16,225 nucleotides of DNA from Paramicrosporidium saccamoebae KSL3 (Eukaryota; Fungi; Cryptomycota), in assembly GCA_002794465.1 (NCBI GenBank), contig MTSL01000169.1:311-16535 (forward strand), given 5' to 3'. Below are positions 2,252 through 16,225 of the stretch, piece after piece. A model generated the notes under the pieces. That model was not told the origin of the DNA. It saw only the letters and a list, made by a program, of their open reading frames with translations, and made no database searches. How positions within the stretch are numbered: position 1 is the first letter of the stretch; each line of letters begins with the position of its first letter. A program made the position numbers and the translations under genes.

Positions 2252-3414
2252 CTAGCTCGCATTTCGGTAGTAACGATAGGGGACAAATGGTAATTTGGTG
2301 ACGGAAATTGGATACTGTTTGCCCCGGATTTGGACTGCGAGAGAGGTGGAATTAGCTAGAGATTTCAACCCTTCCACGCTGTCTGCATTGACATATCCCA
2401 TCGAAATGTTGCTGTTGGTGTGTGGTGAAAAGGTACCACTTGTAATTTTGCCAACGACGGATCCATTTTCCAACTCAGTAATTACTGCGCCTTCTCGAGG
2501 CAGTGGTCCCTCTGGACTAGTAAAGCCAAGCCGTTTTTTTGTGACGCCCATCCGCATCTGCATACTCAGGCGATCAAATCCAGGATAGTCTTTGCGGCTT
2601 TTGGATATAATCCATTGTAGGCCAGCTTCGATGGGAGTAACAGTTTCATCAACATCATGCCCGTAAAGACACAGTCCAGCCTCAAGACGGAGAATGTCCC
2701 TCGCAGCCAATCCTGCCAGTTTCACTCTAGCGTCTTTCAGCAACAACTCGGCCATTGAGGGAGCTGCTTCGGGTTTCACGCTAATCTCAAATCCATCCTC
2801 GCCAGTATAACCGCATCTGGTAATTGTAAACTCTGCAGATTCCAGCGAATTCATAAACAACAGGCTCGTGGCCTGATGTTCACTCAGTAATCCACAACTT
2901 ACGACAACATCTATTGCTTCAGGGCCTAAACGTTATCACAGCAAACGGACAGTGCCTTGCAGTGCAAACAGTGCATTCTCGCATACGCTGACATTGTCGC
3001 TTAACAGGGCTAACACTGCATTGACACGCGATGCATTGGACACGAGAGTATAGTTCGATTCTCTCTTTGTTAAAATGGCATCGTCAATAATTCCGCCTTG
3101 TTCATTCAAGATGGCAGTGTATTGGGCAGCACCCACTCGCATCGTCTTGGTGTCGACAGGCATGAGTGATTCCACTAGTTTAGAAGCAGAATGTCCCTCC
3201 AACCTACACTTGGAGCACATGAATTGGGACTGAACCGGCATTGCAGCATGTGCGATACGTCGAATAGTGATGCATGGCGTCTTGTATGTCGCACAGATTC
3301 CAGGACAGATGTTCCGTCAAATTGGATGGGCATTAACCAACCTGCAAAGGGCACCATCTTGCCACCGTTTTGCACAAGAGTCTCGTATAACAGAGTCTTT
3401 CTCAACAAACTCAT
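2252..3414 (-). CDS. GCV1: Aminomethyltransferase (glycine cleavage T protein); exons 3414-3236, 3203-2956, 2925-2252; 366 aa (391 aa if ATG 3489 is used)
   Basis: Motifs LRKT.LY, KMVPFAGW.MPIQF, LFDVSHM, GGIIDD, ALQG|P, TRCGYTGEDGFEI, GLAARD.LRLEAGLCLYG, G.ITSG.FSP, KLPFVP..YY. Two introns restore one reading frame (1101 nt). Confidence 0.95.
2926..2955 (-). other. Spliceosomal intron 2 of GCV1, 30 nt, GC-AG (alternative: 21-nt GT-AG, 2926-2946)
   Basis: Contains in-frame TGA TAA, so it must be removed. AAG|GCACTG...TTTAG|GC restores the invariant LQGP motif. Confidence 0.7.
3204..3235 (-). other. Spliceosomal intron 1 of GCV1, 32 nt, GT-AG
   Basis: GTTCAG...GTGTAG; removal joins HMLQCR to LEGHSASKLVESL and gives exactly the frame shift between the two ORFs. 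Confidence 0.85.
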
Positions 3415-3494
3415 GATAACAGCTAAATGTTTACCCGCATTGTAAGCAAGCCGGGGAATCCAATAGCGAGTGTTTATTTCCACTCTCATACACA

Positions 3495-4178
3495 ATGAGA
3501 CCTTTAAAACATGTCGTTTTTGACATGGACGGACTCTTACTTGACACGGAAAGACTCTACACTCAAGTATATACGGAGCTGCTTGCTCAATGGGGCAAGC
3601 TGTTCACAATGAAATTCAAACTCCGTTTAATGGGTCTGAGTGCCGCCGAGTCTGCCGTGTTGACGGTAAAAGAATACGAACTGCCGGTTGAGCCTGCAGA
3701 GTTTCAGCGAATGGCAATGGAGAAACAATTGGAAGCATTTAAGGAGTGTTCATTAATGCCTGGTGTGGAGAGACTGCTAAAGCATCTTGCGTCCTGTCAT
3801 GTGCCCATGGCAGTGGCCACCAGCTCCAGAAAGGACACCTACACTATTAAAACGGCCTCTCATCCGGAATTGTTCAAGCTATTTACCGTCGTGGTTAACG
3901 GAGACGATCCAGCAGTAAAGCGTGCCAAACCCTTTCCTGATATTTTCCTAACGGCTGCTGAGCGACTTGGAGTCAATCCTGCGACGTGTCTGGCCCTAGA
4001 AGACTCTCCTAACGGAGTGCGATCAGCTCTGGCAGCGGGAATGTCGGTTATTTGGATACCTGACGCCGCACATGATTTCAGTGTGGATCACGATGATCTG
4101 CTTGACCACCCAGAAATACAAAGACTGGCTTCATTAGAGGATTTCCGACCCGAACATTGGGGTCTACCATCTTTCTAA
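3495..4178 (+). CDS. PUDP: HAD-superfamily pseudouridine-5'-phosphatase (HDHD1/GS1-like)
   Basis: Motif I FDMDGLLLDTE, motif II ATSS, motif III KP.PDIF, motif IV EDSPNGV; C-terminal SLEDFRPE.WGLPSF typical of the HDHD1 subfamily. Confidence 0.9.
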   Translation: MRPLKHVVFDMDGLLLDTERLYTQVYTELLAQWGKLFTMKFKLRLMGLSAAESAVLTVKEYELPVEPAEFQRMAMEKQLEAFKECSLMPGVERLLKHLASCHVPMAVATSSRKDTYTIKTASHPELFKLFTVVVNGDDPAVKRAKPFPDIFLTAAERLGVNPATCLALEDSPNGVRSALAAGMSVIWIPDAAHDFSVDHDDLLDHPEIQRLASLEDFRPEHWGLPSF

Positions 4179-4182
4179 TAAA
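4177..4182 (+). terminator. AATAAA polyadenylation-like signal overlapping the PUDP stop codon
   Basis: TAATAAA at 4176-4182; the same arrangement occurs at 5134-5139 after the first B3/4 gene. Confidence 0.4.
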
Positions 4183-4299
4183 TTTACTTTATAGTCTGAA
4201 TGGGTACTGTGGGGTTAATAATGGCCTAGGAGCTTTGATCCGTAACATATTCTCGTACAACAAACATCTTATCTCTCATCTCTACAGTTGTGGTGGTCA

Positions 4300-4335
4300 G
4301 AATGTTCCAAATTGTTCCATTTTGCGATGAGTCAT
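4300..4335 (+). promoter_or_regulatory. Composite HSE-like (GAAtgTTC-N7-TTC, 4300-4317) plus Gcn4/AP-1 site (ATGAGTCAT, 4327-4335)
   Basis: Motifs match known HSF and Gcn4 consensus sequences and are conserved in the paralogue's promoter while the surrounding DNA has diverged. Confidence 0.6.
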
Positions 4336-4402
4336 CCCCCTTGGCGTAAATACAAAAGTCACGCCCCGGCTGGGATAACTTGAGCCACTCGCTTATCTTT
4401 AG

Positions 4403-5134
4403 ATGACCAAGAATCAGTTTGTCCTCGCCCCCGAGATCTTGACCCGCATTCCGGGAATTCGTATCCTTTTGTTTACCCTGCACGCTGTGAGTCAATCCGA
4501 TACCACCCTCCAATCAAAGTGTCAAGAGCTGTTGAATAATTGTTGGCGCGATTGTGGTGCCTTGTTTAACGGTCCTACCTATGCTAATGTGCAATCGCAT
4601 CCTCAACTAGCTGCTTGGCGTGACTGTTTCAAGTCTCTGGGAATCTCTGTCAAGAAGCACGTCTGTTCCGCAGAATCATTGGCAAAACGAGCAGCAAAGG
4701 ATCCCTCACCGCGAAGCATTAATCCGCTCGTAGACTTTTACAACGCAATTTCAATTCGCCATCTGGTGCCGTTTGGAGCATTTGATCGGAAGGATCTGGA
4801 GGGCAAATGTATGTCATTGAGATTCACCAAGGAAGGGGACACCTTCATGCCATTGGACGGTGAGCAGGCAGAGCAATTGCCTGCGGGTGAAGCGGCCTAT
4901 ATCTGTGAACCGGGAACGGTAATCACCCGACACATTAACTACAAACAGTCCAAATTTGCCCTGATCGGGGATGAGTCCCAAGACGTGGTAATGATGGCCG
5001 AGCTGCTCCCGTCAGTTGATGATGCAGCATTGGATAAATTAGCAAACGATCTTAAAGAACAATGCAAACAGCTGTTTAATCAGGAAATTGATCTCAAAAT
5101 CATCACTACTGGAGGTGAAATAGTTTCCTACTAA
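4403..5134 (+). CDS. Stand-alone B3/4-domain protein (PheRS-beta editing-like, tRNA trans-editing family), copy A, 243 aa
   Basis: AWRDCF.SLG...KK..CSAESL.KR...SINPLVDFYNAISI...PFGAFD, FT.EGD.F.PLDG, GE..Y, RH.N..Q match the bacterial B3/4 protein pattern; intronless. Confidence 0.88.
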   Translation: MTKNQFVLAPEILTRIPGIRILLFTLHAVSQSDTTLQSKCQELLNNCWRDCGALFNGPTYANVQSHPQLAAWRDCFKSLGISVKKHVCSAESLAKRAAKDPSPRSINPLVDFYNAISIRHLVPFGAFDRKDLEGKCMSLRFTKEGDTFMPLDGEQAEQLPAGEAAYICEPGTVITRHINYKQSKFALIGDESQDVVMMAELLPSVDDAALDKLANDLKEQCKQLFNQEIDLKIITTGGEIVSY

Positions 5135-5389
5135 ATAAAAAATAATAAACATCCAACGTAATCACATAAAGTTTGACTGCTAGTTGTGAGGTTAGATTCT
5201 GTTAACTAATATGCGCTCAAGATTGGTAATTGTAATAGGTATCCCACAATCATGAGGGTAATATCCTGTAATGATGCCTTTAATAAATATATACTCTTAC
5301 GCATTGACAGAGTTCCCCTGTTGCCCTATTTACGATGGTACCCTGCAAATATTTGGACGGGCTCTGTCTACATGGGACAAATACTGATG

Positions 5390-5424
5390 GAACATTCCAA
5401 TTTATTCCATTGTGGATGAGTCAT
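5390..5424 (+). promoter_or_regulatory. Composite HSE-like (GAAcaTTC-N7-TTC, 5390-5407) plus Gcn4/AP-1 site (ATGAGTCAT, 5416-5424)
   Basis: Same module as 4300-4335, about 50 bp upstream of ATG 5472. Confidence 0.6.
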
Positions 5425-5471
5425 TTCTCGAGACACGACTATTTAGTCGTTCGCTCGGCTGGTGATTATAA

Positions 5472-6203
5472 ATGATTGAAAACCGCTTCTTGCTTGATTC
5501 AGAGATCCAAAGGCGCATCCCAGGAATCCGCATCCTCCTCTTTACTCTGCGCAATGTAAACCAATCGGATCCCGTCCTCCAGGAGAAATGCCAGGAGCTA
5601 TTACAAAGTAGATGGCGTGACTGTCGTGCCTTGTTTACCGGTCCCACTTATGCCGGTGTGCAGTCGCATCCTCAGTTGGCTGCCTGGCGCGACTGCTTTA
5701 AATCGTTGGGCATTCCCATCAAAAAGTTTGTCTGCTCCGCCGAATCTCTGGCAAAGCGCGCCGTCAAGGACCCCGAACCCCGCAGCATTAGTCCTCTCGT
5801 CGATTTCTATAATGCAATCTCGATTCGCCATTTAGTGTCATTTGGAGCCTTTGATCTGCAAAGTCTGCAGGGACGCTGCATGACATTTAGATTTACCAAA
5901 GAGGGCGATGTGTATTCGGCACTGGATGGAACACAAGAGGAGAAAATGCCGGTAGGCGAGGCAGCAAATATCTGCGAACCCAATACAGTGCTCGCTCGAC
6001 ACATGAACTGGAGACAATCCAAATTCGCGTTGATTGGAAACGAGTCAAAGGACGTGGTTATGGTAGCCGCGTTGCTCGAGTCACTGGACAATGCTGCGTT
6101 GGACAAACTGAAGACTGATATCCACGAACAGTGCAAAGTCTTGTTCGATCAGGAAACTGACATCAAGATTATCCACACTGCTGGAGAGGCTGTTCCCTAC
6201 TAA
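5472..6203 (+). CDS. Stand-alone B3/4-domain protein, copy B, 243 aa
   Basis: 174/243 residues identical to copy A (about 72%, ungapped hand count); same family motifs, with RHMNWRQ. Confidence 0.88.
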   Translation: MIENRFLLDSEIQRRIPGIRILLFTLRNVNQSDPVLQEKCQELLQSRWRDCRALFTGPTYAGVQSHPQLAAWRDCFKSLGIPIKKFVCSAESLAKRAVKDPEPRSISPLVDFYNAISIRHLVSFGAFDLQSLQGRCMTFRFTKEGDVYSALDGTQEEKMPVGEAANICEPNTVLARHMNWRQSKFALIGNESKDVVMVAALLESLDNAALDKLKTDIHEQCKVLFDQETDIKIIHTAGEAVPY

Positions 6204-6219
6204 GTTTGGGCATCTACTT

Positions 6220-6279
6220 TCTCATTAGTAAGGAGTCTCGCCCGTAATGAATCTCACTAGTAATAAATCTCGCTAGTAA
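6220..6279. repeat. 16-bp-period tandem repeat x4 (core TCTCRYYMGTAA)
   Basis: Cores at 6220, 6236, 6252 and 6268, between convergent stop codons. Confidence 0.75.
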
Positions 6280-6318
6280 CAATTTTTCATTTATTGGATT
6301 GTCATGTGTAAGAAAGCT

Positions 6319-7443
6319 TTAACAAAAGCTCTCGGCATGTAGACGATCAATACGGGCTTCAATAGAAGCATCGTCCGAGGAAAAGTATTCGTACCACTTG
6401 CAAGCCGTAGCCACTCTTGTGCTTTGGTACTGCAGATGCTCAATCATCTGGGCTGCCCCTCCGTATGCTGCAACAAAGCGATCGGCAGTATAGATGGTGT
6501 TACGTATGTACCAGCTGGCCAAGGGGTAAACGATAATAACACCAGCCATCATCACAATACTGGAAATAGTGATGGCCGAGACGGGCGGAAAGACCACCCC
6601 GGGATGCTTAGTGAAGCCAAATAAATCGTAAAACGCACCAGTATTTAGGATGTAGAACGAGAGAAGGAGATTGATCAGACCGGGCAAGACTACAAAAGCA
6701 GCCACTTGTATAGGCCTCACTCGACATCCAAGACCGTAAGTAACAGTCGCCCATAAATGTTCAGGCTTGGCAAGAGTCTTTTTGTCAATGTAGATGCGCT
6801 CAGTCAGCAGATTGCGCTGGTAAAAGACACCTGGTTTCTCTGTAATCGCGAGACCAGTGACAGGGAAGCCTTGTCTTTCGCAAAGTTGAAAGACTTTTTC
6901 AGTGCTTGCATCACGCTTAAGAGGCTGGTCGAAATGAAATTGCAGAGGGAACACTGCAAATATTCCAATTCGCACTACAAGTTGGATGACGAGTTGGATG
7001 ACAAGTCCCATCCAGCCCCAATCGGATAGTCGTGTAAACAGTAGCGCAAACATGAACTCTATACCCAGTCGAAGTGACATTTCGCATATCATTAGCAAGG
7101 TCCAGTTAAAACCCGAACCTACCCCAAAATTCAGTACTGCGAAAAAGGTCAAGAACGGCATGAGGTTCATAAAACAATAGGGCCACTTTCCTGCACCTCC
7201 CATAGACTTCTCTATAGCTATCGCCTGTATCCAAAATAATGACAGGGATCCTTTTAGTATCACCCTGCAGTAGCTGGCAAGCAAAACAGCTAAACAGATG
7301 GGCAGCAGGAGAGTGGACCAGGTGCGGCCGGTATTGTTGTATTTAGGCTTCCAGCGCAAGATGTGCACCGTCTGCCAGGCGAGTGAGACCAGGTGGACAC
7401 TTATGATAGTAGCAAAGAAGCTGATGACGTAGGTGCTGTTCAT
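6319..7443 (-). CDS. Ste24/CAAX prenyl protease (peptidase M48A)-like membrane protein, predicted inactive, 374 aa
   Basis: Multiple hydrophobic segments; L....GFP...L, RI.I, ADRF, IEARI align with Ste24. HExxH position reads YGLGC. ATG 7443 is supported by alignment with the paralogue start. Confidence 0.75.
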   Translation of the reverse strand: MNSTYVISFFATIISVHLVSLAWQTVHILRWKPKYNNTGRTWSTLLLPICLAVLLASYCRVILKGSLSLFWIQAIAIEKSMGGAGKWPYCFMNLMPFLTFFAVLNFGVGSGFNWTLLMICEMSLRLGIEFMFALLFTRLSDWGWMGLVIQLVIQLVVRIGIFAVFPLQFHFDQPLKRDASTEKVFQLCERQGFPVTGLAITEKPGVFYQRNLLTERIYIDKKTLAKPEHLWATVTYGLGCRVRPIQVAAFVVLPGLINLLLSFYILNTGAFYDLFGFTKHPGVVFPPVSAITISSIVMMAGVIIVYPLASWYIRNTIYTADRFVAAYGGAAQMIEHLQYQSTRVATACKWYEYFSSDDASIEARIDRLHAESFC

Positions 7444-7610
7444 TTTTCGAATGACTGTGATTGGACCTGCCCCATAATAGGTCCAAGAATCGGTCCACGG
7501 GACGGGATAGGCCAATCCGCGACGCCTAAAGAATAACAACCCCAATCGTACCAAAAATTCCGACCTATAAAAAACGGTCTCTCCATTGTTTGGGCACTAT
7601 GCCGGGGATG

Positions 7611-7722
7611 CCATGCCAGTTAGTGGTTCCTTATCGTCCGTGCCAGTCAGTGGCTCCTTGTCATCCATGCTAGTTAGTGGCTCCTTGTCGTCCATGCTAG
7701 TTAGTGGCTCCTTGTCTTCCAT
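7611..7722. repeat. 27-bp tandem repeat x4 (reads DDKEPLTSM on minus, MLVSGSLSS on plus)
   Basis: Units start at 7611, 7638, 7665 and 7692; an isolated core GGCTCCTTGTC recurs at 7853-7863. Confidence 0.9.
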
Positions 7723-7900
7723 TTGTATTGACACTATGGTGATACTCCAACCACGCAACAGCGGGGACGATGTGTTTCCGACACGTATAGCAGTGTAAAT
7801 AGGTTTTATTTGGAGGGCCCATATATTATAAACCGGGTGGGGTCGGCCATTGGGCTCCTTGTCCCCAATTTGTTTGGTCGATAAATGCAAAGGCTACTAA

Positions 7901-9010
7901 CTAACACTCACTCTCCGCAAGTAGAATATCGATGCGGGCCTCAAGGGGGGCATCGGGCATGGAAATGTACTCGTGAGGCTTGCATGACGTGAAGTAGTCC
8001 GTCTCCGTACTCTTCAACAGCTCAGCTAGCTGAGACCCCAATCCAGTTGCTGTGACAAACCTATCCGCAGCATAGGTAGCGCGGCGTGTGTACCAATATT
8101 TCAAGGGCGATAGGGTGGTAGAAACGATTCCCACCATTATGTGGGACATGATGAATGCCGCAGCGTAGGGAATAGGCTCGCCAAAGGTGGCAGAGTAACC
8201 AAACAAGCCATGAATAGCCACGTTTGGGTAAATGTATAGAGACAGGAGGAATCGCACTAATTCCGGCAAGATTTTCGGGATAGCCTCTTGGAGGAGACTA
8301 GTGCGAGAACCGAGACAGTGTGCAACGTCCACCAGCAGTTCTGATGGATACTTGAGCGCCTTGTAGTTGATGTAGATGCGCTCTTTAAACATGCTACGGT
8401 AGTAAAAGACGTCGTTGAGATTCACAGGCACTAACCCAGTCACGGGAAAGTTGTGTATCTCGCAGAGCCGGAAGATTCTTTCAGTATCCTTATTGCGCTC
8501 AAGTTGTGGGCCGTGATGCGACCGTAAAGGGAACGCAGCAAAGAGCCCGACTCTCAGTGCAAGTTGCAGAACTAGCAAAATAACGATTCCCGTCCACCCC
8601 CATGGATAAAACCACGTAGCCAGTCCTGCAAAGATGGCCTCTAAGGCTATCCGAGCGGCCAGTTCGCCCAAACCCACAAACCTCCACGACTCCTCGAGGC
8701 CAAATTCGGGGTCTCGTTTTAACTCTGAAGCTCCCACCCACAATGCGATACAGTTAATACTACAAATAACATCGGGGAGTGGCTGAAGGATCCAGAGCAA
8801 TGGCAGGACAGGTAGTCTTGTCAAAAGAAGATATCCAGTGATTTCGAGGATGGGAACAAAGGGCAGATAGAGGGTGCGTGTACTTTTACCGACCACATGA
8901 TATTTAGGCGTCCATTTTGTGAGGTGTACGGCTTGGAATATAAACGAGACCACTTGCAGAAGCACAACGAACCAAAAAAGGTAATAGAACCAAGCGCCAC
9001 CGTCGTTCAT
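7901..9010 (-). CDS. Second Ste24/M48A-like membrane protein, predicted inactive, 369 aa
   Basis: Colinear with 6319-7443 (W.PKY, LCE...FPVTGL, ERIYI, ADRFV, EARID.L.AES.C). HExxH position reads HCLGS. Confidence 0.75.
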   Translation of the reverse strand: MNDGGAWFYYLFWFVVLLQVVSFIFQAVHLTKWTPKYHVVGKSTRTLYLPFVPILEITGYLLLTRLPVLPLLWILQPLPDVICSINCIALWVGASELKRDPEFGLEESWRFVGLGELAARIALEAIFAGLATWFYPWGWTGIVILLVLQLALRVGLFAAFPLRSHHGPQLERNKDTERIFRLCEIHNFPVTGLVPVNLNDVFYYRSMFKERIYINYKALKYPSELLVDVAHCLGSRTSLLQEAIPKILPELVRFLLSLYIYPNVAIHGLFGYSATFGEPIPYAAAFIMSHIMVGIVSTTLSPLKYWYTRRATYAADRFVTATGLGSQLAELLKSTETDYFTSCKPHEYISMPDAPLEARIDILLAESEC

Positions 9011-9063
9011 ACTTTCGAGATACGGTAATTGATCAGATTTAATCAATATTTAAGTAAGATAGT

Positions 9064-9098
9064 GTCGCGTAGTGGGAGAAATACCACGTACCTTGTCA
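9064..9098 (+). repeat. Dispersed intergenic element, head-only copy 2
   Basis: 29/35 identical to 1967-2001, then jumps to the ctgcta module. Confidence 0.7.
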
Positions 9099-9307
9099 CT
9101 GCTACTTATTCGGGAGGCCGGGGTCCTCGTTGATCATCAATGTTCAAGTCCATTTATAGTCTCACCAGTGGCGTAGTAATGACCCTATAATAGTAAAGAT
9201 GTATATCGCGCTAACTTTTATTGGTTGCTACAGATCTACCATCTTCAAAGTAGGGAACCAACCCCAAAGACATGGTGCCCAATCCTCTATATTACAATAG
9301 TGTGTAT

Positions 9308-9440
9308 GTTGCGTAGTAGGGATAAATAGTATGGACTGTCAGGCGAGAAAGGGGGGGTTGTTTACTGCTAATCCTATAATAGTATGGATACACACCTCAC
9401 TGTCCTCGAATACCCAACTAATCAGCCATCTACGTCACAC
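9308..9440 (+). repeat. Dispersed intergenic element, copy 3
   Basis: GTYGCGTAGTRGGGATAA head, TGTCAGGCG module and 79-bp tail shared with 1967-2179. Confidence 0.75.
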
Positions 9441-9636
9441 TTACTATTGGTGAGTCCGACCCAGATGGCGGTCTCACAGTCCAGCCCGGCTATATTACGA
9501 GCGACCACCTATAAAGAAGCCACATGCTTTAATAAAAGATAGTTTGCCCATCAGCAAGAGGTTATACTACAACACAGGCCTATTACAGGTCCCAGCTCTC
9601 ATATGGAGCAGGACCTCTTGGTTCGGCACTGAAATG

Positions 9637-11202
9637 TTAACAAAGTACTGTATTAGAAATGTCTACAGATTGAATAATCCTCTCAATACGTGCCATGGTA
9701 ACTGCTCCGGTGAGATGCAGCATGTATAGGGAAAACTCCAACTCGGAAGTCTTATATACGGAAAAGCCCACTAACGGGGAATTGCCATGCACCGACATGC
9801 CCTTTACACAAAGCGTCAAAGTCTCAAACATGAAACGGACAATGGTAACAAAGCCAGCCTGGTTTCCGAGAATGAGGCAGGAGAGCTCAGGAACCCAGAG
9901 CGACATGCAGTACCGGTTATATTGCAGCCAATCCCGAGGATTGATCGTCTGCCAGTGAAAGGCAGAAAGTTCTATGGAAAGTAGACAGCCGTTGACGGGA
10001 TCGTAAATGCAGAGATCATTGCCGGTGGTGACGGTAAATAAATGGTCACTTTGGATTGCCTCTTCAGTGGGAATGGTTTGAAATGAACGATGCCTTTGAT
10101 TGCGCACAACTTGAGAGATTGAGTCACCGGAGACAGATTCGCCCGTCAAGAGACTGCTCCTCTCCAATCTGCGATGATTCAGAATGCCCGTGTCACTCTC
10201 ATAAGAGCCGTTCTCGGCAACTTCCTCAATATCCTCAGCAGTCCAAACGGCATCAGAGGGAACCAATGCACCCAATTCATCGTCTTGGCTGTGCCAGTCA
10301 GCCTCACTCGGATCGGAATTCAAACTGTCCTCAAAATCCTCCATCCATTCTACAGCATCGCTGTGCTCAATCTGACGAATGTAATCAGCACTATCGCCTG
10401 TATCGCTGTCCCCATTGTAGGATTCTTTGTTGGCGCATCGATATTCCTGGCCATTAATGCCATAGTCAGCGACAGATTCGATATTCTTTACGGAAATGCA
10501 ACGACATGTCCAGCCCCATTTTCCAAGAGGATATCTGCTAGATTTGCCATTCACAGTATCACGGAGACAGAAGGAGGAATCGATGCTGACCGATCCCAAC
10601 CATCTACCATCCGAACTAATGGCTACAGAGGGAATATTGTGATCATGTTCACTCCATGTGCGTACCACTTGCCACGAGCGAGTACACACCTCACTAATAA
10701 CGTGGGCATTACATCCGACAAATATTCTATCAACTGAAAAGGAAATTGACCATGCCGACTCGTCCAACTGAACCACAATTGGAACATCCAGGTTGGCAAG
10801 CGACCATAGACAAAGCTGGCCGGCTGTATCTACAGTAGCCAACGTTTCGACGCCATTGACGTCTCCAATTTCCACCGCATTGATAACTTGTTCGTCAGCA
10901 TCACTGAATGGTTCTTTAACAGGCACGACCAGAGTCTTGGCATCTTGTCGGGATGGTTCCGAGTCGATTGGAATTTTCTTGATAAAGATTTTGCGACCCG
11001 CCGCGATGAAAAGCAACCGGCAGTCTTTATAGATTTTTTTGCTCGCCGTGACCAGATTCATGCGCTATAGCCGTTATGGTCGGGTCGTGTGGAATACCCA
11101 AGATGGAATTGGAGTAAAGGGGGGCAGAACCGTTTCCGGCGATTGAGACCCTTCCACGTATGAAATACGAAGAGAGTCCAGTTGATGCACATGCAAGGTC
11201 AT
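9637..11202 (-). CDS. CRT10: CRT10-like WD40 protein; exons 11202-11098 and 11064-9637; 510 aa
   Basis: IN.V..G......L..VD..G, SAWSIS, GCNAH.I, H.HNIP.V, WGW, M...VPEL.....GNQ.G.V and PL.G fit the CRT10 family. The intron restores the N-terminal WRxNL motif. Confidence 0.75.
11065..11097 (-). other. Spliceosomal intron in CRT10-like gene, 33 nt, GT-AG
   Basis: TGG|GTATTC...CATAACGGCTATAG|CGC; contains an in-frame TAG; removal gives PSW-RMNL and links to ATG 11202. Confidence 0.75.
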
Positions 11203-11427
11203 GGGCCGCAATGATTGGCCGACGCTGCATGAATTGCAAAATTATAGTTTTGGCAAGTTTCCACGAATCCATCCGTACAACGTCTGAGTGTCATAATGGT
11301 GTGCAGAAGTGCTACTGCTAGTCGGAACTGACGACCAGTCTGGGATTAATGACCCAAGCCGACAACATGAAATTAAGTGATAATTGCAAGGGTTGAGGGA
11401 CGCCGCAAGAGGAGCGCGGCAAGACTT

Positions 11428-12966
11428 ATGACGAGTATAACAAGCGAAGAGGTCAATTACCTCGTCGTCCGGTACCTGCAAGAGGCTGGCTTTGTTCATT
11501 CTGCGTTCTCATTTTCACAGGAAAGCTTTATCAACAAGTCGGAAATCCGGGCTGGCGCTGTCGCTCCAGGCATGCTGGTCACACTACTGCAGCGCGGGTT
11601 GCACTACACATCCATTGAATTCCATTTAAACGATGACGGCTCAGAAAGGGAGTGTAGTCGCGCGTACAGTTTACTGGAGCCGCATGTGTGTGAACGGGGC
11701 GTGCAAATGGTGCCAAGGCCGCCAACACCAACCATTCCAAAGGAGAGCAAACGAAGAAAGAAGGAGAATGGAGAGAATGGCAAGAAACGGGCGAGTAAGG
11801 AGATGGAGGACGGTAGTACTGCAAGCGAAAAGACTAATGTTTCAGCGGACCCCAAGCCGCCGAAACCTGTAAAGACGGCAAAGAAGGAAAAGACGACCAA
11901 CAGTCTTGAAGTGTCTATTTTGACAGGACATGAATCAGAGGTCATTACGTGCGCCTGGAACCCCTCTCGGGACATTAGTCTCTTGGCCTCTGCGTCGGGC
12001 GACGGAACTGTCCGACTATGGACAGTCCCTTCGGAGGGACCGTGGAATTTGGAAGATGCAAAAATGTCGGTAAGAATTCTGGAACATGCAGCCAGCGGCG
12101 ACAGTCGAGACGTCACCACAATGGATTGGAGTCCGGACGGAATGACCTTGGCCACAGGCTGTTATGACGGAAAGGCGCGTCTATGGAACTCTGATGGAGA
12201 GTTGTTGTCAGTCCTTAACAAACACAATGGTCCCATTTTCCAACTACAATGGAGTCCGGATGGGGCATATTTGGTGAGTGTTGGGGTGGAACCTGCCGTG
12301 GCTATTTGGGACGTGGCCAGTCGAACATTGCTCCGTTCCTACGATCATCACACTGCGCCTGCATTGGACGTGGATTGGAGGGACGACAGGACATTTGCAA
12401 CCTGTTCCACTGACAAACTAATTCTGATTTACTCATTGGATCAGCCGGATGAGCCGGTACTGACTTTGACCGGACACAGCGACGAAGTCAATTCCATCAA
12501 ATGGAGTCCCAAGGGCGACCTGCTAGTCTCCTCCTCAGACGACATGACAGCGCGAGTGTGGAGGGTGCAGGGCGTGGAGACGTATGCACTGGTGCACACG
12601 TTTTCAGAACATTTGATGGAAATATACACTGCCAAATGGAGTACAAATCCCGAAACACCTCTAATTGCCACGGCGTCATTTGATGGGACGGTAAAGTTGT
12701 GGGATCCAGTACAAGGTCTTTGTCGGCACACTTTACAACAACACACTCAGCCCGTCTACGCCATCTCCTTTTCGCCCTGTGGACGGTATCTCGCCAGCGG
12801 CAGTTTAGATGCTGCACTCTATCTCTGGTCCGTAGCAGATGGTCGATTATTGCAAAATTATCATGGACGGGGCGGCATATTTGAGGTGACCTGGAGTCCC
12901 ACCGGCCATCGCATTGCCGCCTGTACCTCTGATGCAACTTGTTGTGTTTTTGAAGCCAAAATGTAG
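11428..12966 (+). CDS. TBL1: TBL1/Ebi/Sif2 LisH + WD40 corepressor subunit, 512 aa
   Basis: LisH ITSEEVNYLV.RYLQE.GF.HSAF; WD40 repeats GHESEV..CAWNP, DVTTMDWSPDG..LATGCYDGKARLW, GHSDEVNSIKWSP, ASFDGTVKLW. The true start is ATG 11428, not GTG 11377. Confidence 0.93.
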   Translation: MTSITSEEVNYLVVRYLQEAGFVHSAFSFSQESFINKSEIRAGAVAPGMLVTLLQRGLHYTSIEFHLNDDGSERECSRAYSLLEPHVCERGVQMVPRPPTPTIPKESKRRKKENGENGKKRASKEMEDGSTASEKTNVSADPKPPKPVKTAKKEKTTNSLEVSILTGHESEVITCAWNPSRDISLLASASGDGTVRLWTVPSEGPWNLEDAKMSVRILEHAASGDSRDVTTMDWSPDGMTLATGCYDGKARLWNSDGELLSVLNKHNGPIFQLQWSPDGAYLVSVGVEPAVAIWDVASRTLLRSYDHHTAPALDVDWRDDRTFATCSTDKLILIYSLDQPDEPVLTLTGHSDEVNSIKWSPKGDLLVSSSDDMTARVWRVQGVETYALVHTFSEHLMEIYTAKWSTNPETPLIATASFDGTVKLWDPVQGLCRHTLQQHTQPVYAISFSPCGRYLASGSLDAALYLWSVADGRLLQNYHGRGGIFEVTWSPTGHRIAACTSDATCCVFEAKM

Positions 12967-12980
12967 CGTAACGTGTAGTT

Positions 12981-13235
12981 GAGTTGTTTAATAGAACGAT
13001 GATAATCATTCCGTGTGTGATGAGTTGTTGAATTGTTGTGTGTGGTTGAGTTATGTGTGGTTGAGTTATGTGTGTACTTATCAGTTTAATGTGTGTGCTT
13101 ATCAGTTTAATGTGTGTGCTTATCAGTTTAATGTGTGTACTTATCAGTTTTACGTGTATGATTACCGAGTTGTTTAATATAACAAGAATAATCATTGCGC
13201 AATAGTTATTTAATTGAACCACGAGAATCATTCTG
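12981..13235. repeat. Nested minisatellite: 33-bp units (12981, 13167, 13203) enclosing 15-bp x2 (13041-13070) and 21-bp x4 (13068-13151) arrays
   Basis: 21-mer ATGTGTGTRCTTATCAGTTTA x4; 15-mer TGTGGTTGAGTTATG x2; 33-mer (G/T)AGTTRTTTAAT..AAC....(T/G)AATCATT x3. Confidence 0.88.
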
Positions 13236-13301
13236 GTGACATAATAGAACCGTGTCCATAATGTTCATAGCGTTTGACCCACTACGTCTCAATCTGATTG
13301 G

Positions 13302-14189
13302 ATGGTCACTGTGGGATTAGTCGTTGCAGTGGAATCTCTATGTCGTTGTTTGGATATTTGGGTGCTTTGGAGATGGCCGCGGTCACAGCTGTACAGGTTC
13401 ACAGTGGTGAGGAGAATAGTGCTGGTGGTAAAGTGGATGGTTCATTGGGCGACGGGACAGAGTGAACTTCGAAGACTGTTGGGAGCACCAATTCCGACCA
13501 CTGAGAAAATGTCTCTAATATCTGACTTGCTGAGACATTCCATGGTATTGAGACGACAATGGACGTTACTCATGCGCAGTGACCAATTAGAGTCTGTGGC
13601 ACGACAAATAGCCGCCAAGAAAAAGATACCCTCCAAAGGCACCCTCTTCAAGCTGCTACTAAGTGCCATCCAACAGATCCGCGATGGCAGAATGCTATTC
13701 GACTCGATTGAAAGGCTGTGTCGCACCCCCTATGATCACGACAACCCTGCCCATCGGAAACTACTTGTGCGTTTGTGGACAGCCTGGAAGACCGATCCTC
13801 TGCCGGAGATACCCTCTGAAGAGTGGAAGGAGCTTGGCTTCCAAGGCACCGATCCTGCCACCGACTTTCGCGCCATGGGTCTTTTTGCTCTGCATTGCAT
13901 TGTCGTCTTTGCAGAGTCAAAGAATGGAAAGTCCATCTACAAAGAGGCGCAGTATGGTCCATATTGGTACAGCTTTGCAGTGGTGGCGGTCAATGTGGCC
14001 GATGCCATCCATAGGTATTTGCGGGACGACAGATTGCATTGCTCTGACATGACCATGGTGGATGCAGAGTTCATCAGACTCATGACCAGCTTCCATTCAG
14101 TGTGGATGCAATCTAAACCCGAAAACTTGTTTGCCTTCAACAACATCTTTGCCCACACCTTAGCCATATTTGAAAGATCGCTAATATAA
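13302..14189 (+). CDS. ELMOD2: ELMO domain-containing protein (ELMOD1/2-like ARF/ARL GAP), 295 aa
   Basis: KW.....TG.SEL.R N-terminus, H..LL..LW, WKELGFQG.DP.TDFRAMG, YSFAVV.VN. Confidence 0.88.
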   Translation: MVTVGLVVAVESLCRCLDIWVLWRWPRSQLYRFTVVRRIVLVVKWMVHWATGQSELRRLLGAPIPTTEKMSLISDLLRHSMVLRRQWTLLMRSDQLESVARQIAAKKKIPSKGTLFKLLLSAIQQIRDGRMLFDSIERLCRTPYDHDNPAHRKLLVRLWTAWKTDPLPEIPSEEWKELGFQGTDPATDFRAMGLFALHCIVVFAESKNGKSIYKEAQYGPYWYSFAVVAVNVADAIHRYLRDDRLHCSDMTMVDAEFIRLMTSFHSVWMQSKPENLFAFNNIFAHTLAIFERSLI

Positions 14190-14259
14190 ACAGTATGCCC
14201 AAATCGGGTGCATCCCCGGGTGGTATAACAAGGGATGGCGGTATAGTTACCGGGGCTGA

Positions 14260-15944
14260 ATGTCATTTCCGATAAAGACATCGGTGCCATCATTACTGCC
14301 CCATCCGATGACACCTCACCACACCAACTCGCCCTACAACACGGCCATCAGCAGCCAAACAGTGCTGCGACAGCGTACAATTGCGGCGGCAGAGACGACA
14401 TGGCTGCAAGTCGGTACACTACACACTGCAAACGCTTATTTTTAGCATCGACAGCACAGTTGATGGGGGAGACAGAAAGGACACAGGCAGCATTGGAGAC
14501 GGTGCTGAGACATAATCCATATCATGTGGGTGCGTTTGTCAGTCTGGGCCATTTGCTGCACAACCAGCGACAATACCTGCAAGCCGCAGAGTCGTACCAA
14601 AAAGCAATTTCCCTCGTAGAATCACAGAGTGGAAGCAACTCTCCCCTTCTGACCACTGTTTGGGCCTCCTTGGCCCATTGTTGGCTGTTGTTGGAGGATC
14701 TGCCAAGGGCATTCCAGGCATATCAGCAGGCATTGGGTTATCCGGGAGGAGCCCGGGACTCTACCCTTTGGTTTGGCGTAGGTCTGCTCTATGACCGTTA
14801 TGCTGCTAATGAACACGCTTTGGAGGCATTCTCTGCTGTGCTCAAGTTGGAGGCGCCGAAACAGAGGGCCGTCCCGTCTGCCATGATGAGGGAGGTTTAT
14901 TTCAGGGTTGGAATGCTTCTTCGGTTTCGGAAGAATTACGACGCCGCCCTCGCCTGCTTTGACTATGTTTCAATATTCCCCCCAGCGCCCCTCCAGCGGG
15001 CCGATGTCAAGCTGCAGATGGCCGTCACCTTTGACGCCAAGAACGACCCCGCCTCTGCCCGCATCATTCTCGAACGAAACGTCATCAAGGATAATCGTCC
15101 GTCAGTGGCGGCGCGAGGAAAGGCACTTCTTGGATGGATTCTGGTGCGCAGCGGTCCTCCCGGCGAGGAGGCCAGTCCTGAGCAGGAACACGGTCTGCAG
15201 CTCCTCCGCCAAGTTGTCATTGAGGAGACTGGTGATGCACTGGCATGGTACTACCTCGGACGTGCCTATGTTTATCGCAAAATGTACACTCAATCCTACG
15301 AGGCCTACCAGGAAGCCGTCTATCGAGACTCTCAAAATGCAGCATTTTGGAATTCTATTGGTATTCTATATTTAGAAATCCATCAATTCCGCGACGCCCT
15401 AGATGCCTTTAGTCGTGCCATCCACCAGAATCCATCCATTGCCGAAGTATGGTGGAACTTGGGCATTTTGTACGAGTCGTGCAATAATCAAATCAATGAT
15501 GCGATTGATGCTTACCAGCGGGCTGCTGAGCTTGATCCGACAAATGTGAGCATTAGGAACCGCATTTTGCTTCGGAAGGCAGTGAATAATGGCACCTCTT
15601 CCACGCCCATCCCCGTTGCAGTTCCCATGGAATTGGACCCGCTACCCTATCTTATGCGTCCCATTCTTCTGGGAACGACTAATCTCCCCCTCCAAAAGTC
15701 GGGTCCGCCCTCCACCGCCATGGTCACATCTAATCCTTCCGCAATCTCCCCCTCAATTCCGGGACAGCCCCCACGGATGAACATTTCTGCCAGACCGCGT
15801 CCGCATTCGATGCAACCCGTCCAGCCCTCACATCCAGCGTCGTACCATTCGCTGACCAGACCTCTAATGCGTTCTGGCATGCCACCTCCAATGGTTGCGC
15901 CAAGATTTGGATATGGTGCGCCTACCCGTCCCAATGGTCAGTAG
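14260..15944 (+). CDS. CYC8: Cyc8/Ssn6 TPR general transcriptional corepressor; exons 14260-14413 and 14446-15944; 550 aa
   Basis: E.TWLQVA|STAQLMG...LRHNPY, DLPRAF.AYQQAL, LWFGVGLLYDRY, WY.LGR, YEAYQ.AVYRD..N..FWNSIG.LY, EVWWNLG.LYESCNNQI.DA.DAY.RAAELDP.N; Pro-rich tail. Confidence 0.93.
14414..14445 (+). other. Spliceosomal intron in CYC8, 32 nt, GT-AG
   Basis: G|GTACAC...TTTTTAG|CA, phase 1 on both sides; joins TWLQV to ASTAQLMGE as in Ssn6 TPR1. Confidence 0.88.
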
Positions 15945-16015: not shown

Positions 16016-16225
16016 GGAGTTTGAGGAGTTTGAGGAGTTGGACGAGTTGGAGTTGGAGTTGGAGTTGAAGTTGAGGTTGAAGTTGGAGTTGGAATTGGAA
16101 TTGGACGAGATTAAAAGTGAGATTAAAGGTGGGGTGAGACTAAAGCGAGATGAGATTAAAAGTGAGATGAGACTAAAAGTGAGATTAAAGGTGGGGTGAG
16201 ACTAAAGCGAGATGAGATTAAAAGT
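16016..16225. repeat. Satellite: GRAGTT-type 6/9-mers grading into GAGAYTAAAAGT 12-mers with a 62-bp higher-order period; runs off the window
   Basis: 16107-16168 is repeated at 16169-16225 (partial) with one substitution. Confidence 0.9.

What the first reader, a model, noticed from the sequence alone, without database searches (positions are those of the whole stretch)
4300..5424. Both B3/4 promoters conserve an HSE-like + perfect Gcn4 site module
Copy A: GAAtgTTC-N7-TTC (4300-4317) then ATGAGTCAT (4327-4335). Copy B: GAAcaTTC-N7-TTC (5390-5407) then ATGAGTCAT (5416-5424). The consensus bases are kept while spacer bases and the rest of the upstream DNA differ. ATGASTCAT is the optimal Gcn4 site (about 0.12 expected per 16.2 kb at equal base frequencies; the two copies share ancestry, so the evidence is retention, not count). 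Amino-acid analogues are known to trigger both HSF and the GCN2/Gcn4 pathway. Inference: a tRNA quality-control enzyme has been wired to the two stress signals that mistranslation produces.
Basis: partly seen in the sequence, partly recalled or inferred. Interest (0 to 1): 0.8.

Follow-up and report, generated by a model that had tools for sequence, protein, structure and literature searches.

The report
Conserved stress-promoter module, two deacylase genes
Two neighbouring copies of a tRNA-proofreading gene in the amoeba parasite Paramicrosporidium carry the same 36-base control sequence, and related uncultured species keep its two core motifs, so it is very probably a real gene switch, but which stress flips it is untested.

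Summary
The window is from Paramicrosporidium saccamoebae (Rozellomycota). The two genes are tandem paralogues (72% identity) of a free-standing B3/4 protein related to CtdA, a bacterial aminoacyl-tRNA deacylase.

Their synonymous sites are saturated and their upstream DNA is otherwise unalignable. Even so, a 36-nt island is 30/36 identical. It holds a gap-type heat-shock element, GAAnnTTC-N7-TTC, followed by ATGAGTCAT.

New evidence from related sequences:
- A 90% relative keeps the island almost unchanged while its flanks decay.
- More distant orthologues (69-42% identity) keep TGASTCAT 45-75 nt before the ATG.
- Several keep a heat-shock element 11-20 nt upstream of it. Two are perfect three-unit elements.
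- TGASTCA is the most widely shared 7-mer among the 12 promoters compared.
- Fifty-four bacterial-looking loci have none.

So this is a real, selected composite site for an HSF-type factor and a bZIP factor.

An oxidative-stress reading (AP-1/Yap-type bZIP plus an HSF-type factor) fits equally well. The enzyme lacks two pocket residues that the CtdA paper lists among its substrate-binding residues, so its substrate is unknown.

Verdict: a new instance of known element types, of moderate interest.

The parts
4299..4318 (.). Gap-type heat-shock element of copy A: aGAAt gTTCc (aaatt) gTTCc, at -104..-85 from the ATG
   Evidence: Read directly. Matches nGAAnnTTCn(5 bp)nTTCn. It is one of only two such matches in the window. 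The architecture is the same as the human UBC gap-type element GGAAAGTTCT(CGAGC)GTTCC.
4327..4335 (.). ATGAGTCAT, an AP-1/Gcn4-type bZIP site of copy A, at -76..-68
   Evidence: TGASTCAT is kept in 7 of 12 related promoters at -45..-75.
4300..4335 (.). Conserved 36-nt island of copy A (heat-shock element, linker, bZIP site)
   Evidence: 30 of 36 columns identical to 5390-5424, while the flanks do not align.
4347..4352 (+). TAAATA, a possible TATA-like element 11 nt after the bZIP site (inferred)
   Evidence: Sequence only. TATA-like elements lie 15-21 nt after the bZIP site in copy B, L002, L092 and L004.
4367..4373 (.). CGGCTGG, a short block shared with copy B at the same 40-nt offset from ATGAGTCAT; function unknown
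   Evidence: with coordinates read.
4403..5134 (+). B3/4 gene copy A (243 aa), a CtdA-like free-standing aminoacyl-tRNA deacylase homologue
   Evidence: Pfam B3_4, E 8e-18. PDB 9MKL E 1e-15 and 9F7E E 2e-14.
5389..5408 (.). Gap-type heat-shock element of copy B: gGAAc aTTCc (aattt) aTTCc, at -83..-64
   Evidence: It differs at only one base (A to G) across 5390-5407 in the 90% relative L001.
5416..5424 (.). ATGAGTCAT, an AP-1/Gcn4-type bZIP site of copy B, at -56..-48
   Evidence: Unchanged in L001.
5435..5450 (.). Perfect 7+2+7 palindrome ACGACTATTTAGTCGT that encloses a TATA-like TATTTA (5440-5445); role unknown
   Evidence: I3. Partly kept in L001, with one change on both sides of a pair.
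5456..5462 (.). CGGCTGG, the counterpart of 4367-4373
   Evidence: with coordinates read.
5472..6203 (+). B3/4 gene copy B (243 aa), 72% identical to copy A

Best explanation
The 36-nt island in front of each B3/4 gene is a composite promoter-proximal activating sequence. It has two parts: a gap-type heat-shock element for a trimeric HSF-type factor and, 9-10 nt further on, a TGASTCAT site for a bZIP dimer with AP-1/Gcn4-type specificity.

It lies 11-15 nt upstream of a TATA-like sequence and 48-103 nt upstream of the start codon. It was already present before the tandem duplication and has been held by purifying selection since.

It places both paralogues of a CtdA-like aminoacyl-tRNA deacylase, a gene family of bacterial origin, under the same stress-responsive control. 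Proteotoxic stress is the most likely signal.

Shown: the sequence architecture, its conservation and its specificity to these promoters. Inferred: which proteins bind, that the module is not transcribed, and which stimulus acts.
For: 1. Selection between the paralogues. dS is saturated (4-fold sites 40% identical), yet the island is 30/36 identical in otherwise unalignable DNA.

2. Footprint in a close relative. L001 carries a 90% orthologue of copy A and, in tandem, a copy-B orthologue. Identity with the window is 90-95% across 5391-5420, 35-50% upstream and 65-75% downstream.

3. Core motifs kept while spacing changes:
- L002 (69% identity): GAACATTC, 11 nt, TGACTCAT.
- L092 (45%): perfect GAAGCTTCGCGAA, 14 nt, ATGACTCAT, then TATAAG.
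- L091 (42%): GTGACTCAT, no heat-shock element.
- L004 and L006 (44-46%): TTCTAGAA, 14-16 nt, TGAGTCAT.
- L003 (46%): perfect TTCTAGAAACTTC, then TATAAAGA.

The centre of the bZIP site flips G to C in three of these promoters, which is what a pseudo-palindromic dimer site tolerates.

4. Unbiased ranking. TGASTCA is the most widely shared 7-mer among the 12 promoters (7 of 12). No shuffle reaches this, and the shuffle mean is 0.21.

5. Excluding the discovery pair:
- TGASTCAT is in 4 of 9 promoters against 0.08 expected.
- Heat-shock elements of three or more units are in 2 of 9 against 0.039 expected (P about 0.0008).
- The ordered composite is in 3 of 9 against 0.003 expected.

6. Specificity. 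In 134 kb of eukaryotic loci the composite occurs 9 times, and 7 of those are B3/4 promoters. Fifty-four bacterial-looking loci of the same family have no TGASTCA and one heat-shock dyad in the 150 nt upstream. In the window these two are the only intergenic TGASTCA sites and the only gap-type elements.

7. The geometry GGAAnnTTCn(5 bp)nTTCC is that of a documented functional gap-type element.
Against: - No expression, transcription-start or binding data exist here.
- I could not check that P. saccamoebae encodes an HSF-type protein or a bZIP with this specificity.
- Six of 13 related promoters lack TGASTCA (L003, L005, L088, L009, L093, L097). Five of these also lack a nearby heat-shock element.
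- L091 has the bZIP site only. L003 has the heat-shock element only.
- L002 lost the third unit. L004 and L006 have a dyad plus a mismatched third unit (TAC).
- Out of clade, the dyad alone is not significant (2 of 7, P about 0.11).
- If transcription started upstream, the ATG inside ATGAGTCAT would open an 18- or 19-codon upstream reading frame.
Confidence: 0.6

Rival explanations
1. Hsf1 reads misfolded protein and a Gcn4/CpcA orthologue reads uncharged tRNA through Gcn2, so the deacylase is induced by the two consequences of mistranslation.
For: - Both window sites, and L092, carry the full optimal 9-mer ATGASTCAT.
- No orthologous site has Yap-type TTAC half-sites in its place.
- The family includes a proven deacylase for canavanyl-tRNA.
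- From my own knowledge, not tested here: in yeast, amino-acid analogues activate Hsf1.
Against: - The site alone cannot tell Gcn4 from other AP-1-type bZIPs.
- P. saccamoebae has lost or reduced many amino-acid biosynthesis pathways and imports amino acids, so a general-control regulon may be vestigial.
- Gcn2 and Gcn4 were not shown to be in the genome.
- The pocket differs from CtdA at the Cys166 and Glu118 equivalents.
Confidence: 0.2
2. An oxidative-stress module. An AP-1/Yap-type bZIP works together with an HSF-type factor (Hsf1 or a Skn7-like protein), as at yeast oxidative-stress promoters. The deacylase would then clear tRNA charged with oxidised amino acids.
For: - TGASTCA is the AP-1 recognition element (my own knowledge).
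- Skn7 carries an HSF-type domain, binds heat-shock elements and associates with Yap1 at promoters.
- L091 has a second site with a Yap-like half, ATGAGTAAT, 6 nt after TGACTCAT.
- The invariant Phe at the Glu118 position suggests a non-basic side chain as substrate (inference).
Against: - Optimal Yap sites are TTASTAA (my own knowledge), and none of the seven main sites has that form.
- Microsporidia lack the histidine kinases and the phosphotransfer protein upstream of Skn7. Rozellomycota were not reported.
- No evidence here bears on the substrate.
Confidence: 0.2
3. Only the bZIP site is a shared functional element. The upstream half is bound by something else, for example a TEA/ATTS factor at CATTCY or a factor that reads the two TTCCA repeats 10 nt apart, or it matters only in the Paramicrosporidium clade.
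For: - TGASTCAT is the more widely kept part: 7 of 12, including L091, which has no heat-shock element.
- CATTCY is present in copy A (minus strand), copy B and L002.
- The out-of-clade dyad count is not significant on its own.
Against: - The heat-shock reading is the only one that unites copies A and B, L001, L002, L092, L004, L006 and L003.
- L092 and L003 have perfect three-unit elements with no CATTCC at that place.
- Elements of three or more units are far above expectation.
- All six differences between copies A and B fall on bases the two consensus motifs leave free: four on the 'n' positions of the heat-shock element and two in the linker before ATGAGTCAT.
Confidence: 0.12
4. The island is conserved for a reason other than transcription-factor binding: recent gene conversion between the tandem copies, a 5'-UTR RNA structure, or an upstream reading frame that starts at the ATG of ATGAGTCAT.
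For: - In both copies that ATG opens an 18- or 19-codon frame, with CGGCTGG in the same phase (my reading).
- The copies are adjacent, so conversion is possible.
Against: - The A of that ATG is G or C in L002, L004, L006 and L091. In L001 the frame stops after 8 codons.
- RNA folds are not unusual (z -1.5 and -1.8) and are not shared.
- Conversion would not explain retention of the cores in other species with changed spacing.
- The island's 17% divergence is like that of first and second codon positions.
Confidence: 0.05

Closest known systems
Gap-type heat-shock element, nTTCnnGAAn(5 bp)nGAAn; example: human UBC -712/-693, GGAAAGTTCT(CGAGC)GTTCC
   Same: - Two contiguous inverted nGAAn units plus a third in register after a 5-bp gap.
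- The flanks are the same (GGAA..TTCn ..... nTTCC).
- It is promoter-proximal.
   Different: - Binding by HSF has not been shown here.
- The element drives a tRNA-proofreading homologue, not a chaperone.
- In some orthologues it is a perfect three-unit element, in others only a dyad.
Gcn4 response element / AP-1 TRE (ATGASTCAT)
   Same: - Exact 9-mer in both copies and in L092, and 8 of 9 bases in four other promoters.
- The central G/C is interchangeable.
- Its position upstream of a TATA-like box matches yeast general-control promoters.
   Different: - The factor is unknown.
- The host genome has a reduced amino-acid biosynthesis repertoire.
- There is a single site per promoter, fused to a heat-shock element.
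Yap1-Skn7 / Hsf1 co-regulated oxidative-stress promoters of yeast
   Same: A bZIP site next to a site for an HSF-type DNA-binding domain. The factors are known to interact.
   Different: - The sites here are TGASTCA, not TTASTAA.
- Two-component signalling is absent from Microsporidia, and its status in Rozellomycota is unknown.
CtdA, canavanyl-tRNA(Arg) deacylase (PDB 9MKL, 9F7E; PMC10018355, PMC12449066)
   Same: - A free-standing B3/4 fold of about 230-245 aa.
- The equivalents of Asn105, Gly116, Asn170, Trp/Tyr171, Arg/Lys172, Gln173, Ser80 and Leu84 are kept.
- Bacterial origin with transfer to lower eukaryotes, as the CtdA paper proposes.
   Different: - Only about 25-30% identical by eye to the solved proteins.
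- The Cys166 equivalent is Thr (copy A and most of the clade) or Ala (copy B).
- The Glu118 equivalent is an invariant Phe.
- The gene is duplicated in tandem and carries a eukaryotic stress-type promoter.

Membership tests
Heat-shock element (HSF binding site) | At least three nGAAn units in alternating orientation on a 5-bp register (perfect, gap or step type) | tested here: met
   - Copies A and B: GAAnnTTC-N7-TTC, gap type.
- L092 and L003: perfect three-unit elements.
- L002, L004 and L006: dyad only.
Heat-shock element (HSF binding site) | An HSF-type DNA-binding protein is encoded by the organism and binds the element | not testable with these tools
   - Only 16 kb of the genome is available.
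- The genome paper and its supplements do not mention HSF.
Heat-shock element (HSF binding site) | Heat or proteotoxic inducibility of the downstream gene | not testable with these tools
   No expression data could be reached. mRNA-seq data exist for the species.
Gcn4/CpcA response element | TGASTCA core with the optimal flanks (ATGASTCAT) | tested here: met
   - Exact 9-mer at 4327-4335 and 5416-5424.
- Also exact in L001 and L092.
- TGASTCAT in L002, L091, L004 and L006.
Gcn4/CpcA response element | A Gcn4 orthologue (with a leader controlled by upstream reading frames) and Gcn2 are present; the site is enriched at amino-acid metabolism genes | not testable with these tools
Amino-acid biosynthesis is much reduced in this species, which argues for caution.
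Yap1-type response element | TTAC/GTAA half-sites (TTASTAA) | tested here: not met
   All seven main sites are TGASTCA. Only L091 has an extra site with a TAA half, ATGAGTAAT.
TEA/ATTS (Tec1/AbaA) site | CATTCY kept at the same place across orthologues | tested here: not met
   Present in copy A (minus strand), copy B and L002. Absent at that place in L092, L004, L006 and L003.
CtdA-type free-standing aminoacyl-tRNA deacylase | B3/4 fold and significant similarity to characterised CtdA | tested here: met
   - Pfam B3_4: E 8e-18 and 6e-17.
- 9MKL and 9F7E: E 1e-15 to 8e-14 over about 200 residues.
CtdA-type free-standing aminoacyl-tRNA deacylase | Residues shown to be essential: Asn105, Gly116 and Gln173 | tested here: met
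   They align with the invariant N114, G125 and Q182 of the 18-sequence clade.
CtdA-type free-standing aminoacyl-tRNA deacylase | Strictly conserved Cys166 that tunes canavanine specificity, and Glu118, which the paper lists among the residues defining the aminoacyl binding site | tested here: not met
   - Cys166 aligns with Thr (copy A) or Ala (copy B).
- Glu118 aligns with the invariant F127.
- So I file these genes as CtdA-like, not as canavanyl-tRNA deacylases.
CtdA-type free-standing aminoacyl-tRNA deacylase | Hydrolysis of a mischarged tRNA | not testable with these tools
   This needs a biochemical assay.

The most novel reading that the evidence does not exclude
A bacterial trans-editing deacylase was captured by an ancestor of a Rozellomycota-like group. 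It was fitted with a composite HSF-plus-bZIP promoter, and that wiring has been kept through speciation and duplication. On this reading these parasites, which import host amino acids, run a stress-inducible translational proofreading response: misfolding or tRNA-charging stress switches on an enzyme that removes the offending aminoacyl-tRNA.
Probability: 0.2. Interest if true: 0.7.

Novelty: new member of a known kind. Interest (0 to 1): 0.4.

Why it matters
The regulation of free-standing tRNA-editing proteins is barely studied. I found nothing about promoter logic in Rozellomycota in the papers I searched.

This module is short and sharply delimited, and comparison across species supports it. 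It can be moved directly into yeast reporters. It links a horizontally acquired proofreading gene to classic eukaryotic stress elements.

If the link holds, it would show how a transferred bacterial gene is brought under host-style stress control. It would also suggest that some parasites induce translational quality control on demand. If it does not hold, the site is still a useful first cis-element for this uncultivable lineage.

Tried and rejected
- Stramenopile or Blastocystis origin. This was suggested by the TBL1 hits and by introns of 30-32 nt. It was rejected because the Blastocystis 3'-end motif TGTTTGTT is not enriched, and because GcvT, joined from its exons, matched Paramicrosporidium saccamoebae on a contig of the window's own length.
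- Upstream reading frame starting in ATGAGTCAT. Rejected because the A is not kept in four orthologues and the frame length differs even in the 90% relative.
- Conserved RNA hairpin. The folds are not unusual and not shared.
- TEA/ATTS CATTCC site. It fits only three promoters.
- Gene conversion. It cannot explain cross-species retention with changed spacing.
- Searching papers for the sample accession numbers found nothing.
- Searching papers and supplements for HSF or bZIP in Paramicrosporidium, Rozella or Microsporidia gave nothing usable.
- A chaperone-promoter test. The only chaperone-related gene in any fetched locus is GrpE in L094. It has a tRNA-Met gene in front of it and no heat-shock element, so the test says nothing.
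- My early note that the 10-mers of copies A and B are exact reverse complements was wrong. Only the 8-mers GAATGTTC and GAACATTC are.
Full report
WHAT IS IN THE SEQUENCE

- Copy A: GAATGTTCCAAATTGTTC at 4300-4317, ATGAGTCAT at 4327-4335, ATG at 4403.
- Copy B: GAACATTCCAATTTATTC at 5390-5407, ATGAGTCAT at 5416-5424, ATG at 5472.

Both downstream genes are uninterrupted 243-codon frames with a Pfam B3_4 domain. They are 72% identical with no gaps.

In the whole window, ATGASTCAT and GAANNTTC-N7-TTC each occur only at these two places. About 0.2 of each is expected, and 3 of 200 shuffles reach two. The bare 7-mer TGASTCA is not enriched in the window (4 against 2.85). Its other two copies are inside coding DNA. 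No other gap-type element exists in the window.

WHERE THE WINDOW COMES FROM

The first guess from TBL1-like hits was a stramenopile. Introns of 30-32 nt in the GcvT gene suggested Blastocystis, but its 3'-end motif is not enriched.

I joined the GcvT exons by removing three predicted introns at 3204-3235, 2926-2955 and 2873-2902. 

P. saccamoebae is an intranuclear parasite of amoebae in Rozellomycota, the sister group of Microsporidia. It has 3,750 gene models, has lost many amino-acid pathways, and has expressed amino-acid permeases.

WHAT THE GENES ARE

Both proteins match two solved structures of CtdA, the free-standing canavanyl-tRNA(Arg) deacylase: 9MKL from Salmonella and 9F7E from Pseudomonas canavaninivorans. 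E-values are 1e-15 to 8e-14 over about 200 residues.

The 2025 study of that family reports that the CtdA-1 clade was transferred from bacteria to lower eukaryotes at least twice.

My tree of the 49 closest proteins puts all copies that lie in a eukaryotic gene context into one clade of 18, with 100% SH-aLRT support. A long branch separates it from a bacterial group.

Pocket residues:
- The equivalents of the essential residues Asn105, Gly116 and Gln173 are invariant in that clade.
- The strictly conserved Cys166 of CtdA-1 is Thr here (Ala in copy B).
- Glu118 is an invariant Phe.

I therefore call these CtdA-like deacylase homologues of unknown substrate.

IS THE MODULE MORE THAN SHARED ANCESTRY?

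Between the two copies, four-fold degenerate sites are 40% identical and dS cannot be computed, so neutral DNA should be scrambled. The two intergenic regions are indeed unalignable except for one island at 30 of 36 columns. The local score is 23 against 12.3 +/- 2.0 for shuffles, reached by 3 of 2000.

All six differences fall on bases the two consensus motifs leave free: four on the 'n' positions of the heat-shock element and two in the linker before ATGAGTCAT. The central TG of copy A has become CA in copy B. This turns the 8-mer into its own reverse complement, a change that a dyad-symmetric binder would not notice.

Close relative. L001 is a metagenome contig with a 90% orthologue of copy A. 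It carries a copy-B orthologue in tandem. Its intergenic DNA is 35-50% identical to the window upstream of the island, 90-95% across 5391-5420 and 65-75% downstream. This is a clean phylogenetic footprint.

More distant promoters:

| Locus (protein, identity to copy A) | Heat-shock element | Gap | bZIP site | Afterwards |
|---|---|---|---|---|
| L002 (P0004, 69%) | GAACATTC | 11 nt | TGACTCAT | TATAAATA |
| L092 (P0005, 45%; second paralogue, same sample as L002) | perfect GAAGCTTCGCGAA | 14 nt | ATGACTCAT | TATAAG |
| L091 (P0009, 42%) | none | - | GTGACTCAT | - |
| L004 and L006 (44-46%; syntenic with each other) | TTCTAGAA | 14-16 nt | TGAGTCAT | - |
| L003 = L008 (46%) | perfect TTCTAGAAACTTC | - | only a TGACG half-site | TATAAAGA |
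| L005, L088, L009, L093, L097 | none nearby | - | none | - |

Statistics:
- An unbiased count of all 7-mers over the 12 promoters compared (L097 was fetched later) ranks TGACTCA/TGAGTCA first, in 7 of 12. No shuffle reaches this, and the shuffle mean is 0.21.
- Leaving out the two window copies and one of the L004/L006 pair, TGASTCAT is in 4 of 9 promoters (0.08 expected).
- In the same set, elements of three or more units are in 2 of 9 (0.039 expected, P about 0.0008).
- The ordered composite is in 3 of 9 (0.003 expected).
- With the whole Paramicrosporidium-like clade also left out, TGASTCA is in 2 of 7 (P about 0.005). The heat-shock dyad alone is then not significant (P about 0.11).
- In 134 kb of eukaryotic loci the composite occurs nine times, seven of them at B3/4 promoters.
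- Fifty-four further metagenome loci of the same protein family, mostly G+C-rich and many with an AGGAG-like sequence before the start, so probably bacterial, have no TGASTCA and one dyad in the 150 nt upstream.

HOW IT MOST LIKELY WORKS

The first half has exactly the geometry of a gap-type heat-shock element: two contiguous inverted nGAAn units and a third in register after 5 bp. The functional human UBC element GGAAAGTTCT(CGAGC)GTTCC is built the same way.

The second half is the pseudo-palindromic AP-1/Gcn4 site. Its centre switches between G and C among orthologues, as such sites allow.

The bZIP site lies 11-21 nt upstream of a TATA-like sequence in copies A and B, L002, L092 and L004. 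It lies 45-76 nt upstream of the ATG in every case.

I infer a compact promoter in this order: heat-shock element, bZIP site, TATA-like box, a transcription start about 30 nt later, then a very short leader. Steps shown: architecture, conservation, specificity. Steps inferred: the binding proteins, that the island is untranscribed, and the stimulus.

WHICH FACTORS, WHICH STRESS?

The sequence cannot decide.

- It is favoured by the full optimal 9-mer in four promoters and by the absence of Yap-type half-sites.
- It is weakened by the reduced amino-acid biosynthesis of this parasite.
- Gcn2, Gcn4 and HSF genes could not be looked for.

An oxidative-stress reading is equally open:
- HSF-type domains include Skn7, which binds heat-shock elements and associates with the AP-1-like Yap1.
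- However, Microsporidia lack the upstream two-component parts.

A heat-shock element at this gene points most simply to proteotoxic stress.

ALTERNATIVES EXCLUDED

- An upstream reading frame from the ATG inside the site. The ATG is not conserved, and the frame is cut to 8 codons in L001.
- An RNA structure. The z-scores are -1.5 and -1.8, and the folds differ.
- A TEA/ATTS site. It fits three promoters only.
- Gene conversion. It cannot explain other species.

CONTEXT OF THE LOCUS

A syntenic contig from a related organism (L094) has TPR, TBL1-like, CRT10-like, HAD and GcvT genes. It has neither B3/4 gene, nor the two paralogous membrane-protein genes that follow them in the window. So the roughly 5.4-kb block at 4179-9636 is specific to this lineage at this place.

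VERDICT

The module is a genuine, selected composite cis-element of familiar types (heat-shock element plus AP-1/Gcn4-type site) in front of a horizontally acquired, duplicated CtdA-like gene.

This is a new instance of known kinds. It is moderately interesting, chiefly as a directly testable link between stress transcription and tRNA proofreading in an uncultivable early-diverging fungal lineage.

Noticed in passing
window 2252-3414 (minus strand); introns at 3204-3235, 2926-2955 and 2873-2902: The GcvT gene has three tiny introns of 32, 30 and 30 nt. One is in frame and has no stop, so it cannot be seen in ORF lists. One is GC..AG as I modelled it. The public protein model (450 aa) differs from my exon joining (356 aa, 94% identity).
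   Followed up: partly
window 6319-7554 (-) and 7901-9046 (-): Two tandem paralogous multi-pass membrane proteins (411 and 381 aa, 37% identical) have no Pfam family. They lie directly after the two B3/4 genes.
   Followed up: partly
L094 1-20924 compared with window 2252-15944: A syntenic contig of a related organism has the GcvT, HAD, CRT10-like, TBL1-like and TPR genes. It lacks both B3/4 genes and both membrane-protein genes, and its HAD gene is in a different orientation. The block at about 4179-9636 is specific to this lineage.
   Followed up: partly
window 5435-5450: A perfect 7+2+7 palindrome, ACGACTATTTAGTCGT, encloses a TATA-like TATTTA between the bZIP site and the ATG of copy B. 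In the 90% relative it reads GCGGCTAGTTAACCGT: one pair changed on both sides (A-T to G-C) and one pair broken.
   Followed up: partly
L002 about 226-233 and L092 about 183-190: Both B3/4 paralogues of the organism in sample DRR438482 have CTGATTGG (a CCAAT box on the other strand) just upstream of the heat-shock element. The window copies do not.
   Followed up: no
window 4367-4373 and 5456-5462: CGGCTGG is shared by both promoters exactly 40 nt after the ATG of ATGAGTCAT. It is not explained by either motif.
   Followed up: no
window 6220-6279, 7611-7722, 13035-13157, 16016-16225: Several intergenic tandem-repeat arrays with periods of 16, 27, 15/21 and 6-62 nt. The one at 13035-13157 coincides with a strong G-over-C skew.
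   Followed up: no
L006 10001-10069: The automatic gene call for P0011 starts at an ATG that overlaps the TGAGTCAT site. The alignment with its relatives points to the start 69 nt further on, which puts the module at a normal promoter distance.
   Followed up: yes
L094 964-1035: A tRNA-Met (CAT) gene lies directly upstream of a GrpE gene in the related organism. That GrpE promoter has no heat-shock element.
   Followed up: yes
L091 about 1003-1031: The promoter of the 42% orthologue has two bZIP-type sites 6 nt apart, GTGACTCAT and ATGAGTAAT. The second has a Yap-like TAA half. There is no heat-shock element.
   Followed up: no
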